A stretch of 64,000 nt of DNA, from positions 108,276 through 172,275 of the forward strand of contig MCFE01000101.1 in NCBI GenBank assembly GCA_002104905.1, written 5' to 3'. The notes beneath the pieces are model-generated. The model saw nothing but the letters and a program-made list of their open reading frames with translations, made no database searches and was not told the DNA's origin. Below are positions 45,233-49,285 of this stretch, in pieces. Within the stretch, counting starts at the first letter, position 1. Every line of letters begins with the position of its first letter. Position numbers and translations under genes: made by a program. Source of the stretch: Basidiobolus meristosporus CBS 931.73. Its lineage: Eukaryota > Fungi > Basidiobolomycota.

Positions 45233-45321
45233 GTAGCTGGGATAGGCATCCTGCTGGTCATGTAGCTGGGGATAGGCATCCTGCTGGTCATGTAGCTGGG
45301 AATAGGCATCCTGCTGGCCAT
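45233..45321. repeat. About 30-bp tandem repeat x3
   Basis: GTAGCTGGG(G/A)ATAGGCATCCTGCTGG(T/C)CAT x3. Confidence 0.9.
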
Positions 45322-45409
45322 TCTCGGTTTATTTATGATGTTGCTCTACTCAATAACAAATACACTTCATCTAGGCACGCTAAGTGATGTGGAAGCAATG
45401 GCTGTAACT

Positions 45410-45760
45410 CTAGGCGATCTGGAAGTAATGGCTGTAACGCTCAGCGCCTGTATCCGCAATGAACCGAACCGCATATTTATCACCAGGCTTCAAATCGGAT
45501 GGGACTTTCCAGATGTGCGATTCTTCGTTGACGTCAATATCCTTGGCAATGGTGCGAGATAAAGCAAGATTCTCAGCCGGCCCTTCACGTAGCTCGATGG
45601 TTAGGGATGTTTCCAAATCCTGCTCCTCAATGATCCATTCAATGTCGATGTATTCACCACGTGTCCATTTGGTAGTTGCCACCGGGCTGGTAATGCTCAT
45701 GTTAGCTTGAGATAGAGTGGCCATGGCAAGAATGGCAGCCAAGTAGAACGATTTGAACAT
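45410..45760 (-). CDS. Small secreted Kre9/Knh1-N-like (PF10342-type) beta-sandwich protein, paralogue 1
   Basis: Signal peptide MFKSFYLAAILAMATLSQA; ITSP...W..G...IEW...TIEL..G...W.VP..L..G.KYAVR...YSHYF pattern. Confidence 0.75.
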   Translation of the reverse strand: MFKSFYLAAILAMATLSQANMSITSPVATTKWTRGEYIDIEWIIEEQDLETSLTIELREGPAENLALSRTIAKDIDVNEESHIWKVPSDLKPGDKYAVRFIADTGAERYSHYFQIA

Positions 45761-46096
45761 GATAGTGTTGGTGATATCAGGAAGAGAGGTTGAATGATGT
45801 ATTCTGTGTATCTTCAGGGTTTATATATTTCTGTTCGTTGTGAATTTTCCTGTTCATGCCATAAATGCCCGAGAAGCCTAATTGTTCTCATTATAGTTAG
45901 AGTAGTGTTCGCTAATTGTTCGCAGCTTAGCCAGAATAATATTCACCGATTGTTCTCCAAGGTGCTTGTGGGGATTTATGTTACAATGGGCGCTGTTGAT
46001 AGGCATTTTACAGTATTTTGGTTTTTGCCAACACTAGAATAATGTTAGGTGAGTATTCAATAATAGACTGGTGTTTGGGTATAAATGTTTTTTCCG

Positions 46097-46198
46097 ATAC
46101 TGGACTAGTGCTTGAATATCAATGTCAAAGCATTTGTCAATACTGGACTAGCGCCTGAGTGTAAATGCCTTTGTCGATACTGGACTAGTGTCTGAGTG
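46097..46198. repeat. Degenerate ~37-44-bp repeat x3 adjoining the palindrome's outer arm
   Basis: ATACTGGACTAGYGYYTGA... three times; the last two share TGAGTGTAAAWGCCTTT. Confidence 0.8.
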
Positions 46199-46296
46199 TA
46201 AAAGCCTTTTTATTAAGTGTTTTGTGTAGGATCCAATATATGTGTGAAGTACAGAATGGGCGGTAGTATTAATGGTATACATTGCTAGAGAGCTCC

Positions 46297-46647
46297 CTAT
46301 TTGATCTTGAAGTAGTGGCTGTAGCGATCGGCTCCCTTGTCAGAGATGACACGGATGGAGTACTTATCACCGGCCTCTAGGTCCTCCGGCACAGTCCAAT
46401 CGAAGGACTCAAAGTTGGCATCAGCATCAGTGGTGATCTCATAGACCAATGCCAGGTTAGCCTTGGGGCCCTCGCGAAGCTCGATGGTAACGGTCTCAGC
46501 AAGATCAGCCTCGTCGATCTTCCACTCAATAGTCACCTCTTCGCCACGAGTCCATTCAGTGTGCTCGACAGGATGGATGATAGAGATCTCAGCTGCAACT
46601 GAGAGGAGCGTGAAGAGCAGGAAGATACTGATGATAAAGGCGCGCAT
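46297..46647 (-). CDS. Small secreted Kre9/Knh1-N-like protein, paralogue 2
   Basis: MRAFIISIFLLFTLLSVAA signal plus a mature domain identical to paralogue 3; TATA-like element at about 46688. Confidence 0.8.
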   Translation of the reverse strand: MRAFIISIFLLFTLLSVAAEISIIHPVEHTEWTRGEEVTIEWKIDEADLAETVTIELREGPKANLALVYEITTDADANFESFDWTVPEDLEAGDKYSIRVISDKGADRYSHYFKIK

Positions 46648-46927
46648 TTTCAGTTTGATGTACACTTGGCGATACTGCCAGCCCCAATATATAGGATTTG
46701 AGCCATAATGAGCATTATACTTACTACAATAGGCTAGTGCATGGCATTATATTAAAATGGTTAGGATTGGGATTTATTTCAAGTACCACTCCTTTCCACG
46801 ATGCCCGCTTCTGTAGGGAGCGAGGTCGAGCAATGCACTCCCAAGATAATCGCGAAATTCTCCTTCACTCGTTTGTATAAAAGCCATCAGTCGTCACTAG
46901 CATACACTATCAACATCCACCACAGCA

Positions 46928-47281
46928 ATGTACAAGAAGCTTGTATTCCTTTTGGCCTTATTTGCCCTTTTTTTCGTTTCCACCGCGGAAATATCCATTA
47001 TCCACCCGGTCGAGCACACTGAATGGACTCGTGGCGAAGAGGTGACTATTGAGTGGAAGATCGACGAGGCTGATCTTGCTGAGACCGTTACCATCGAGCT
47101 TCGCGAGGGCCCCAAGGCTAACCTGGCATTGGTCTATGAGATCACCACTGATGCTGATGCCAACTTTGAGTCCTTCGATTGGACTGTGCCGGAGGACCTA
47201 GAGGCCGGTGATAAGTACTCCATCCGTGTCATCTCTGACAAGGGAGCCGATCGCTACAGCCACTACTTCAAGATCAAATAG
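46928..47281 (+). CDS. Small secreted Kre9/Knh1-N-like protein, paralogue 3
   Basis: TATAAAA at about 46876; MYKKLVFLLALFALFFVSTA signal plus the same mature domain. Confidence 0.8.
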   Translation: MYKKLVFLLALFALFFVSTAEISIIHPVEHTEWTRGEEVTIEWKIDEADLAETVTIELREGPKANLALVYEITTDADANFESFDWTVPEDLEAGDKYSIRVISDKGADRYSHYFKIK

Positions 47282-48222
47282 GGAGCTCTCTAGCAATGTA
47301 TACCATTAATACTACCGCCCATTCTGTACTTCACACATATATTGGATCCTACAGAAGCCACCTAATATTCAAATAAATACCTGCGCTTGCAAAGTACATC
47401 ATTAGCATTCATATGTGATGGTAGTTGAGCATTCTTTTTATATCTACATCAGGCAGTGCGAGCTGCTCTTTCGGCTTTAGGTACTCAACATTTGCTTGGA
47501 GTTTGGAATGATAGCAACTATCGCCTTACAATCTGGAATGACAGCAACTATTGCTCAATGATTGATTGATGTGGTCGTGGTATTCCTACTTCTACAGGGA
47601 TTGCCCCAAGAACATGTGAGCAAGGTTTGGGGGCTTTGGACAACTTAATAACCATGGCTATCTAGGTACCTAACATTTCGGTTGAAGCATTCCAAGTAAA
47701 TCCCAATAAAGAATCTGGCCAGGAAATAGCAAAGACCATAAGCTAGGATCTAAGCTAGGATCTAAATAGCAATGCCAAGAATATATTATTTTGCAAAGTC
47801 ATGCAAAAGACAAATTTCAAATATCCAAGTTAGATGTTGCCTAAATACTCTATAAGCAAAAAGTATACTTGTATCAAGTACCGGGAGCTTTGAGATTTTT
47901 GGCAGAAAGGACGGAATTGTGAGTGGATGCCACTTCCCTTAATAAACACTGCATCCAGTGTCTGCTGGAATACGTGTAAAGTTAGACTATTTTCAAATTT
48001 TGCCCATGCGTCTCATACTATTTGGGGAGCAGAAATTGATCCATCTATAATAGCTATGAAACAATGTGCACGCTTGGTATTCATAGTTTGTAAACAATGG
48101 TTGCCGACAAGTAGTAATGATCAACGATTGCTGATGGTAACCGGGAAGAGATGTCAGTGCTGAAATAGGAGGGGATGGAGCTATGATGCAGCAGTGGTGA
48201 CAACGGAAATGATGACCGTAAT

Positions 48223-48323
48223 GGTGGAAGCTGGAGGTTGGAAATGAAAATGAAGGTGGAAGCTGGAGATTGGAAATGAAAATGAAGGTGGAAGCTGGAG
48301 GTTGGAAATGAAAATGAAGGTGG
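48223..48323. repeat. 32-bp tandem repeat x3
   Basis: GGTGGAAGCTGGAG(G/A)TTGGAAATGAAAATGAA x3 plus GGTGG. Confidence 0.95.
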
Positions 48324-48547: not shown

Positions 48548-49285
48548 ATGCTTTACGCCAGCATCTTGATCGCACTGCCAGCTCTGCAGTTTGCAACTGC
48601 CGGCCCTACGGAAACTGAATGGTACTACGAAACGTACCCTGGAAGCTGGGAATATGTGACCTATAATGTTCCCGAGAAAAAGTGCAGTGCACCAGCTGTG
48701 CAAGCTCCATTCAATAACAAAGCGATTTCTTTCCATGAAAAAAAGGATCCCGCCACATTTGATTCCAACCCAGGAAGTGACCACGGCATCACCGCAAAAT
48801 CCGTAATAAAGGCTGGTTTGAAGCCTGGAAAGATAGTTCGTGTGAATGGGTTTGCCTACCAATTTGCCTACTGGGGTAGGGGTAAGAATGATAATTGGAT
48901 TGAGAAGGGCCAACAGGTAAAGGTAACCACAGTGCCCGGAGCTAACCGTTTAGGTTTCCTATTAGCCAGCAACATGGGGAATTTCGGGGGGAAATTTGAA
49001 ATTGTCTACACTGACTGCAGCTCCAAGAGTGCGGATGTGGGGGCCACTGACTGGAAATGGACAGTTGCAAGAGCTCCGGGAAATACCGTTGCACTCAGGG
49101 ATCTAGTCGCTTCCCCCAATAAGCTAGAAGTGCGCCTGTATTCCACCGAAGTACCAATTGATGCTGGCAAAGAGATTGCATATGTCAAATTTCCCACTGC
49201 AGTTTATCCAATCCGCCCATATAAGAAAGGTCACAATGGGCATGTTCATGTGTTTGCCATAGCTACCAAAAAAGCTCCCCATTGA
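48548..49285 (+). CDS. Secreted protein (245 aa) resembling the actinobacterial GH92-associated C-terminal beta-sandwich domain, intronless
   Basis: Signal MLYASILIALPALQFATA; ordered motifs FNNKAIS, ATFD, GLKPG, DNW...GQ, LGFLLAS, IVYTD.S, TDW, GNTVA, VPIDAGKEIAYVKFP, HVHVFAIA. The family match is from memory, not a search. Confidence 0.7.
   Translation: MLYASILIALPALQFATAGPTETEWYYETYPGSWEYVTYNVPEKKCSAPAVQAPFNNKAISFHEKKDPATFDSNPGSDHGITAKSVIKAGLKPGKIVRVNGFAYQFAYWGRGKNDNWIEKGQQVKVTTVPGANRLGFLLASNMGNFGGKFEIVYTDCSSKSADVGATDWKWTVARAPGNTVALRDLVASPNKLEVRLYSTEVPIDAGKEIAYVKFPTAVYPIRPYKKGHNGHVHVFAIATKKAPH

What the first reader, a model, noticed from the sequence alone, without database searches (positions are those of the whole stretch)
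46225..47353. Gene palindrome with a sharp gene-conversion tract
Seen: two divergent genes share a 280-bp promoter. Their arms are identical over 345 bp, including synonymous sites and 72 bp of 3' UTR. Immediately inside the arm the same amino acids use different codons (GAG ATC TCT ATC ATC CAT CCT versus GAA ATA TCC ATT ATC CAC CCG), and the signal peptides are wholly different. So the duplication is old but the mature domain was recently homogenised. Known: arm-to-arm conversion maintains genes in palindromes (e.g. mammalian Y). Inference: concerted evolution yields one mature protein with two signal peptides/promoter directions; the spacer could also invert by arm recombination.
Basis: partly seen in the sequence, partly recalled or inferred. 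Interest (0 to 1): 0.75.

Follow-up and report, generated by a model that had tools for sequence, protein, structure and literature searches.

The report
Mirror-image gene pair homogenised by conversion
Two old head-to-head copies of a small secreted-protein gene in the fungus Basidiobolus meristosporus have had their last three quarters copied from one onto the other so recently that 345 bases are letter-identical, a clean but ordinary case of gene conversion.

Summary
Two intronless genes, B (46297-46647, -) and C (46928-47281, +), lie head-to-head 280 bp apart. They share perfect 345-bp inverted arms (46225-46569 and 47009-47353) that run from codon 28 to 72 nt past the stop.

- **Inner edge:** 8 codons encode the same residues but 7 differ at the third base (7/8 against 0/91; Fisher p = 5e-10).
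- **Outer edge:** 10 of 14 bases still match in register, then nothing does.
- **Unshared parts:** signal-peptide and promoter DNA show no similarity. Each gene has its own TATA box and AATAAA.

The window is Basidiobolus meristosporus CBS 931.73, a PacBio assembly. The proteins are single Kre9/KNH Ig-like domains (Pfam PF10342). A third paralogue, A, lies next door.

The best reading is interlocus gene conversion between old, closely spaced inverted paralogues, probably recurrent. Each signal peptide best matches a different B. ranarum gene, which hints that the duplication predates the species split. The protein trees cannot settle this.

The mechanism is well known (C. elegans hsp16 and Y-chromosome palindromes). 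This scan's earlier notes, which I did not check, list several similar cases elsewhere in this genome. This is a new member of a known kind, of modest interest.

The parts
45410..45760 (-). Gene A: third, older Kre9/KNH-domain paralogue (116 aa), in tandem with B. It is not part of the palindrome and serves as the divergence yardstick.
   Evidence: ORF. Pfam PF10342 E = 2.2e-13. 54% identical to C. Of 54 codons with a conserved residue, 33 differ from B. Its B. ranarum orthologue is K7432_000419.
46297..46647 (-). Gene B: 116-aa secreted Kre9/KNH-domain protein, the left gene of the head-to-head pair.
   Evidence: ORF. Pfam PF10342 E = 6.8e-16. The exact sequence is in the public collection as P0001, on a 172,275-bp contig.
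46928..47281 (+). Gene C: 117-aa secreted Kre9/KNH-domain protein, the right gene of the pair. The mature part is identical to B.
   Evidence: ORF. Pfam PF10342 E = 7e-16. The public model ORX99192.1 (141 aa, B. meristosporus CBS 931.73) contains it in full.
46225..46569 (-). Left perfect arm (345 bp): codons 27-116 of B, the stop, and 72 nt of 3' flank.
   Evidence: 345/345 complementary to 47009-47353.
47009..47353 (+). Right perfect arm (345 bp): codons 28-117 of C, the stop, and 72 nt of 3' flank.
   Evidence: The 95% upper bound on arm divergence is 0.86%.
46570..46593 (-). Inner diverged homology in B: 8 codons for the mature N-terminus (AEISIIHP).
   Evidence: 17/24 nt match C. All 7 differences are at third positions.
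46985..47008 (+). Inner diverged homology in C: the same 8 residues encoded by different codons.
46211..46224 (-). Outer diverged homology in B's 3' flank. It overlaps B's own AATAAA at 46209-46214.
   Evidence: 10/14 in register with 47354-47367, p = 9e-4. AATAAA lies 83 nt after the stop.
47354..47367 (+). Outer diverged homology in C's 3' flank. C's own AATAAA follows at 47372-47377.
46648..46927 (.). 280-bp unique spacer between the two start codons. It holds two outward-facing TATA-like boxes: 46687-46693 for B and 46876-46882 for C.
   Evidence: TATA at -46 and -52. No similarity between the two halves.

Best explanation
Genes B and C are old inverted paralogues of a small secreted Kre9/KNH-domain protein. 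Homologous recombination between the two closely spaced inverted copies, without crossing over, has copied one gene's sequence onto the other from codon 28 to about 72 nt past the stop. This is interlocus gene conversion. It could act within one chromatid, between sister chromatids, or by template switching at a replication fork.

The event is very recent: no difference in 345 bp, so divergence is below 0.9%. Paralogues whose synonymous sites are saturated would offer almost no perfect homology on which to start a first conversion. The arms have therefore most likely been converted again and again since the duplication. The 5' part (promoter, signal peptide, first 8 mature codons) and the distal 3' flank lay outside the tracts and drifted apart. 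That drift in turn sharpens the boundaries, because mismatched DNA blocks heteroduplex extension.

The result is two independently promoted genes with different signal peptides. After signal-peptide cleavage they should release the same mature protein.

Shown: the identity tract, its diverged homologous flanks, separate core-promoter and poly(A) motifs, and family membership. Inferred: recurrence, the recombination pathway, the cleavage sites, and expression of both copies.
For: - Identity tract: 345/345 identity against a background in-register match rate of 0.28.
- Sharp step at the inner edge: 7 of 8 same-residue codons differ there, against 0 of 91 in the tract (Fisher p = 5.4e-10).
- Homologous flanks: they are homologous but diverged on both sides, 17/24 (p = 1.7e-5) and 10/14 (p = 9e-4). 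The tract is therefore a patch inside older homology, not a fresh insertion.
- Age of the unconverted part: its synonymous divergence is as high as between the older paralogues A and B (33/54).
- Unshared 5' parts: signal-peptide and promoter DNA are unalignable.
- Sister species: C's signal peptide best matches B. ranarum K7432_000420 (p = 0.006) and B's best matches K7432_004396 (p = 0.0025). The known orthologue pair A/K7432_000419 behaves the same way (p = 0.0005).
- Mature-domain tree: it groups B with C and groups the two B. ranarum genes together (88/89).
- Assembly: it is PacBio (PMC7466969), so reads span both arms.
- Precedent: a 100% identical inverted hsp16 repeat with a 416-bp spacer in C. 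elegans was attributed to gene conversion (PMC3966223).
Against: - Recurrence is not demonstrated. One recent event would give the same picture within a single genome.
- The cross-species support is weak. The signal-peptide p-values are uncorrected for 25 comparisons of short hydrophobic peptides.
- AU tests do not reject placing the B/C mature domain with either B. ranarum gene (p = 0.07 and 0.09).
- The two B. ranarum genes lie on different contigs and differ at 15/90 mature residues. No palindrome is shown there.
- There is no clear GC-biased-conversion signal. GC3 is 0.66 in the tract and 0.46-0.70 in other genes of the window.
- No read-level or population data were available.
Confidence: 0.85

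Rival explanations
1. A single recent, non-homologous partial inverted duplication, for example a fold-back or replication template switch. It would have copied about 345 bp of one gene next to an unrelated 5' region and so created a chimeric second gene, rather than converting a pre-existing paralogue.
For: The arms are perfect and short and the spacer is short (439 bp), as template-switch products are. No similarity is detectable in the signal-peptide or promoter DNA.
Against: Homology continues past both ends of the perfect tract. On the inner side 8 in-frame codons encode the same residues with synonymous-only changes (17/24, p = 1.7e-5). On the outer side 10/14 bases match (p = 9e-4). Both genes have the family's standard 116-119 aa layout, with a signal peptide of the same length. 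Each signal peptide has its own best match in B. ranarum.
Confidence: 0.06
2. cDNA-mediated conversion. A 5'-truncated reverse transcript of one gene's mRNA recombined with the other copy and overwrote the 3' three quarters of the transcribed region.
For: The tract runs from a sharp internal point to 10-18 nt before each gene's AATAAA, so it covers the 3' part of the transcript. The same window holds a retroelement with reverse transcriptase, and a VPS15 copy is said to have lost a block of introns (scan notes, not checked here).
Against: The genes have no introns, so the diagnostic signature is absent. The tract stops before the poly(A) signals, not at a poly(A) site. Close inverted repeats recombine readily without any RNA intermediate.
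Confidence: 0.05
3. Assembly or polishing artefact. The arms really differ and were homogenised by consensus calling, or the palindrome is a chimeric-read product.
For: Perfect identity is what a collapse or mis-polishing would give. Only one assembly was seen.
Against: The assembly is PacBio (PMC7466969). Reads of several kb anchor each 345-bp arm in unique flanks. The two arms are joined in frame to different, intact signal peptides, promoters and poly(A) signals, which an adapter-type palindrome artefact would not produce. Polishing could hide a few differences but could not erase about 30% divergence. Both proteins are in the public annotation of this contig.
Confidence: 0.03

Closest known systems
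C. elegans hsp16-1/hsp16-48 inverted repeat (Russnak & Candido 1985, as reviewed in PMC3966223), and adjacent inverted hsp70 pairs in worms and flies
   Same: Small genes in a perfect inverted repeat separated by a few hundred unique bp (416 bp there, 439 bp here). In both, identity is attributed to gene conversion and not to a recent duplication.
   Different: There the whole genes and their promoters lie inside a 1.9-kb arm. Here only codon 28 to the 3' UTR is homogenised, and the signal peptides and promoters stay different.
Mammalian Y-chromosome palindromes with arm-to-arm gene conversion (reviewed in PMC3403216)
   Same: Inverted arms kept near-identical by intrachromosomal conversion around a unique spacer. 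Crossing over between arms would invert the spacer.
   Different: The scale differs (kb to Mb arms holding whole genes, against 345 bp holding partial genes). The chromosomal context differs too: there is no evidence that this region is non-recombining.
Interlocus gene-conversion patches in paralogue pairs and arrays of the same genome
   Same: Same organism and same pattern: a homogenised core with old, diverged ends, including head-to-head pairs.
   Different: A different gene family. Here the boundary lies 8 codons inside the mature protein and separates two different signal peptides from one mature domain.
Kre9/Knh1 cell-wall beta-1,6-glucan proteins of yeasts (Pfam PF10342 N-terminal Ig-like domain)
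   Same: The encoded proteins match the PF10342 domain well above threshold and have N-terminal signal peptides.
   Different: They consist of that single domain only (97-98 mature residues). They lack the Ser/Thr-rich and C-terminal parts of Kre9/Knh1. They are domain-family members and not Kre9 orthologues, and their function is unknown.

Membership tests
Interlocus (ectopic) gene-conversion tract between paralogues | A run of identity far longer than the divergence of adjoining homologous sequence predicts | tested here: met
   0/345 nt differ, against 7/24 in the adjoining codons. Same-residue codons differ at 0/91 against 7/8, Fisher p = 5.4e-10.
Interlocus (ectopic) gene-conversion tract between paralogues | Diverged but homologous sequence on both sides of the tract, so the tract lies inside older homology | tested here: met
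   Inner side 17/24 (p = 1.7e-5). Outer side 10/14 (p = 9e-4).
Interlocus (ectopic) gene-conversion tract between paralogues | Phylogenetic incongruence between the tract and its flanks across species | tested here: inconclusive
   The signal peptides pair across species (p = 0.0025 and 0.006, uncorrected). The mature domains tend to group by species (88/89). AU tests give p = 0.07-0.09.
Interlocus (ectopic) gene-conversion tract between paralogues | Arm variants that co-segregate among strains | not testable with these tools
No collection on hand holds other Basidiobolus genomes.
Chromosomal palindrome maintained by arm-to-arm conversion (Y-type) | Near-identical inverted arms around a unique spacer | tested here: met
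   345-bp perfect arms and a 439-bp unique spacer.
Chromosomal palindrome maintained by arm-to-arm conversion (Y-type) | Long arms (kb to Mb) that contain whole genes | tested here: not met
   The arms are 345 bp (383 bp at 97%) and hold only codon 28 to the 3' UTR of each gene.
Chromosomal palindrome maintained by arm-to-arm conversion (Y-type) | The same palindrome in a sister species, with arms more alike within than between species | not testable with these tools
   Only B. ranarum proteins were available. The two candidate orthologues lie on different contigs.
Invertible (flip-flop) DNA segment | Both orientations of the spacer observed in reads, strains or species | not testable with these tools
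   There is only an indirect hint. In B. ranarum the neighbour of the A orthologue (K7432_000419) is K7432_000420, which has the C-type signal peptide. In this window A's neighbour is B.
Kre9/KNH-like N-terminal Ig-like domain family (Pfam PF10342) | Profile match above Pfam's gathering score | tested here: met
   59.2 bits (C and B) and 51.2 bits (A), against a cut-off of 24.6.
Kre9/Knh1 proper (yeast beta-1,6-glucan assembly proteins) | Full architecture: the N-terminal domain plus Ser/Thr-rich and C-terminal Kre9 regions | tested here: not met
   The proteins are 116-117 aa. The PF10342 match covers residues 26/27 to 115/116, and no other domain is present.

The most novel reading that the evidence does not exclude
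The mini-palindrome is a long-lived arrangement, older than the B. meristosporus / B. ranarum split. Conversion is confined to the mature domain, so two different promoter-plus-signal-peptide cassettes keep delivering one identical protein. Crossing over between the arms occasionally flips the spacer. The flip would explain why the gene next to the A orthologue in B. ranarum carries the C-type signal peptide, whereas in B. meristosporus it carries the B-type.
Probability: 0.15. Interest if true: 0.45.

Novelty: new member of a known kind. Interest (0 to 1): 0.25.

Why it matters
The locus is an unusually clean small example of a gene-conversion tract. It has base-precise boundaries and diverged homology on both sides. 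The functional split is neat: different promoters and signal peptides, one mature protein.

It adds to the picture, noted repeatedly by this scan, that paralogues in the duplication-rich Basidiobolus genome are widely homogenised. That matters for dating duplications and for building gene trees in this lineage, because converted parts look young. It also flags a probable error in the public gene model of one copy.

It does not reveal a new mechanism.

Tried and rejected
- **Sister-species DNA.** I asked for the genomic context of the B. ranarum homologues and of the window's own protein with the look-up of encoding contigs.
- **Synteny from locus tags.** The right-hand neighbour (48548-49282) has B. 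ranarum homologues only on other contigs (K7432_009809, 006013, 014095). That gives no help on the arrangement beside K7432_000420.
- **Residual similarity in the unshared parts.** Gapped local alignment of the signal-peptide/promoter halves and of the distal 3' flanks found nothing above shuffled controls.
- **Shared promoter motifs among A, B and C.** Only scattered 7-9-mers turned up, nothing convincing.
- **AU tests.** They could not decide which B. ranarum gene the converted domain belongs with, so the donor is unresolved.
- **GC3 as a sign of biased conversion.** It was not distinctive.
- **Solved structures by sequence.** No hit below E = 0.68.
- **More copies in the window.** tblastn and blastn of the arm found only A, B and C.
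- **Local hypermutation of a young duplicate.** I rejected this because the step from 0/345 to 7/24 occurs within one codon.
- **Left out.** Structure prediction and the large representative-protein search. The Pfam assignment is secure and the claim does not rest on an absence of relatives.

Full report
**What is there**

The region holds three intronless ORFs of 116-117 aa:

- A: 45410-45760, minus strand.
- B: 46297-46647, minus strand.
- C: 46928-47281, plus strand.

All three match the Pfam family PF10342 (Kre9/KNH-like N-terminal Ig-like domain) far above its cut-off. B and C score 59.2 bits and A scores 51.2 bits, against 24.6.

Each begins with a typical signal-peptide layout, read directly from the sequence:

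- a basic N-terminus;
- 12-14 hydrophobic residues;
- small residues before the conserved A-E start of the mature part.

No signal-peptide predictor was available. The proteins are that single domain and nothing else. They are therefore domain-family members and not Kre9/Knh1 orthologues, and their function is unknown.

Exact look-up places B and A in the public collection on a 172,275-bp contig. C is contained in full in ORX99192.1 of Basidiobolus meristosporus CBS 931.73. An earlier scan note had named this organism, and these look-ups confirm it.

**Checking the observation**

A strand-to-strand comparison in register shows 345 of 345 complementary bases between 46225-46569 and 47009-47353. 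The repeat finder reports the wider 383-nt arms at 97%.

- **Extent.** The perfect tract starts at codon 28 of C and ends 72 nt after the stop codon.
- **Chance.** The background in-register match rate in the spacer and outer flanks is 0.28, with a longest run of 3.
- **Inner edge.** The 8 codons of the mature N-terminus encode the same residues in both genes, yet 7 differ at the third base. The contrast is 7 of 8 against 0 of 91 same-residue codons (Fisher p = 5.4e-10).
- **Unshared 5' parts.** Further in, the signal peptides share 5 of 19 residues when anchored at the N-terminus. Neither their DNA nor the promoters align better than shuffled sequence.
- **Spacing.** There are 280 bp between the two start codons and 439 bp between the perfect arms.

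**A refinement on the promoter**

The 280 bp is not one shared promoter. Each gene has its own core elements:

| Gene | TATA-like box | AATAAA after the stop |
|---|---|---|
| B | 46687-46693, at -46 | 83 nt (46209-46214) |
| C | 46876-46882, at -52 | 91 nt (47372-47377) |
| A | at -67 | 77 nt |

For B and C the AATAAA lies just outside the identical tract. The two promoters share no convincing motifs.

**Why conversion and not a fresh duplication or an artefact**

The perfect tract is bordered on both sides by sequence that is still homologous but diverged:

- On the inner side, 17 of 24 bases match, and every difference is synonymous (p = 1.7e-5).
- On the outer side, 10 of 14 bases match in register (p = 9e-4). 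After that nothing matches.

A new duplication with arbitrary breakpoints would not be framed by older homology in the same register and reading frame.

The synonymous divergence beside the tract (7/8) is statistically the same as that between the clearly older paralogues A and B. Those two differ at 33 of 54 same-residue codons, which is saturation. The unconverted part of B/C is therefore old, while the tract is younger than 0.86% divergence (95% bound).

The assembly was made from PacBio reads (PMC7466969). Such reads span both 345-bp arms and their unique flanks, so collapse is unlikely. Short-read polishing could hide a few differences at most. Each arm is joined in frame to a different intact 5' part, which an adapter-type palindrome artefact would not give.

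**One event or many**

Saturated paralogues offer almost no stretch of perfect identity on which a first conversion could start. It is therefore more plausible that the arms have been converted repeatedly since the duplication. The regions beyond the usual tract ends would meanwhile have drifted, and that drift itself blocks heteroduplex extension and sharpens the edges. This is inference from established knowledge of homology-dependent recombination.

The cross-species evidence points the same way but is weak. Only two Basidiobolus proteomes were in the protein collection.

- **Signal peptides.** Each B. meristosporus gene best matches a different B. ranarum gene:

  | B. meristosporus gene | Best B. 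ranarum match | Score | Shuffle p |
  |---|---|---|---|
  | C | K7432_000420 | 37 | 0.006 |
  | B | K7432_004396 | 35 | 0.0025 |
  | A (secure orthologue pair) | K7432_000419 | 51 | 0.0005 |

- **Caveat on those p-values.** They are uncorrected for 25 comparisons of short hydrophobic peptides.
- **Mature-domain tree.** It groups B with C, and groups K7432_000420 with K7432_004396 at 88/89 support.
- **AU tests.** They do not reject joining the B/C domain with either B. ranarum gene (p = 0.069 and 0.088).
- **Identity levels.** The converted domain is 82% identical to K7432_000420 and 71% identical to K7432_004396. This hints that C was the donor but is not decisive.
- **A shared derived residue.** Both B and C carry Ile at mature position 6, where every other family member has Thr or Ser. 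So even the 8-codon stretch was probably homogenised once, long ago.

**Spacer inversion**

Crossing over between the arms would flip the 439-bp segment and swap the two promoter-plus-signal-peptide cassettes between the arms. The products would be unchanged except for their distal 3' ends.

There is one hint. In B. ranarum the neighbour, by locus tag, of the A orthologue (K7432_000419) is K7432_000420, which has the C-type signal peptide. In this window A's neighbour is B. A flip would explain this. So would loss or relocation of the B-type gene, which in B. ranarum lies on another contig.

Homologues of the right-hand neighbour gene lie on other B. ranarum contigs.

**Comparison with what is known**

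Conversion between adjacent inverted paralogues is long established. A close precedent is the C. elegans hsp16 inverted repeat, with 100% identical arms and a 416-bp unique spacer, which was attributed to conversion. Inverted hsp70 pairs are similar (PMC3966223). Y-chromosome palindromes work the same way on a much larger scale (PMC3403216, listed; the mechanism is from general knowledge).

The particular feature here is that the tract excludes the signal peptide and promoter, so two different precursors carry one mature protein.

The scan's own earlier notes list several conversion-homogenised pairs and arrays elsewhere in this genome, including small head-to-head palindromes. I did not check them and they are not evidence for this locus. 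They do mean the scan has seen this kind of thing before on other DNA.

**Verdict**

This is a new member of a known kind. Interest is modest (0.25).

Noticed in passing
window 46801-46927: The public model of gene C (ORX99192.1, 141 aa) adds 24 residues from an upstream exon (46801-46870) through a 55-nt GT-AG intron (46871-46925). That intron contains the TATA-like box at 46876-46882, and the extension buries the signal peptide. All nine other family members are 116-119 aa with the signal peptide at the N-terminus, so the 117-aa ORF is probably the true product. The exact 117-aa sequence is not in the protein collection.
   Followed up: partly
window 45377-45436 and 45239-45328: Directly after gene A's stop codon lies a 30-bp tandem copy (83%) of its last 8 codons plus the stop. 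About 80 nt further on there are three 30-bp tandem repeats, two of them identical.
   Followed up: no
window 46057-46202: Tandem repeats, reported as two 66-nt copies 80 nt apart at 74% with an internal motif of about 40 nt. They fill the space between gene A's promoter and the outer end of the left arm.
   Followed up: no
window 48548-49285: The right-hand neighbour is a 245-aa probable secreted protein with no Pfam match. Its only homologues found are Basidiobolus proteins: one further B. meristosporus paralogue and three B. ranarum genes, at 59-67% identity and all on other contigs.
   Followed up: partly
B. ranarum proteins P0010 / P0002 (K7432_000419 / K7432_000420): The orthologue of gene A and the gene with the C-type signal peptide carry consecutive locus tags on one 61-kb contig. 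The gene with the B-type signal peptide (K7432_004396) is on a 24-kb contig. The locus therefore differs between the two species.
   Followed up: partly
window 48212-48323: Three and a half copies of a 32-bp tandem repeat (88-90% identity) lie upstream of the neighbour gene.
   Followed up: no
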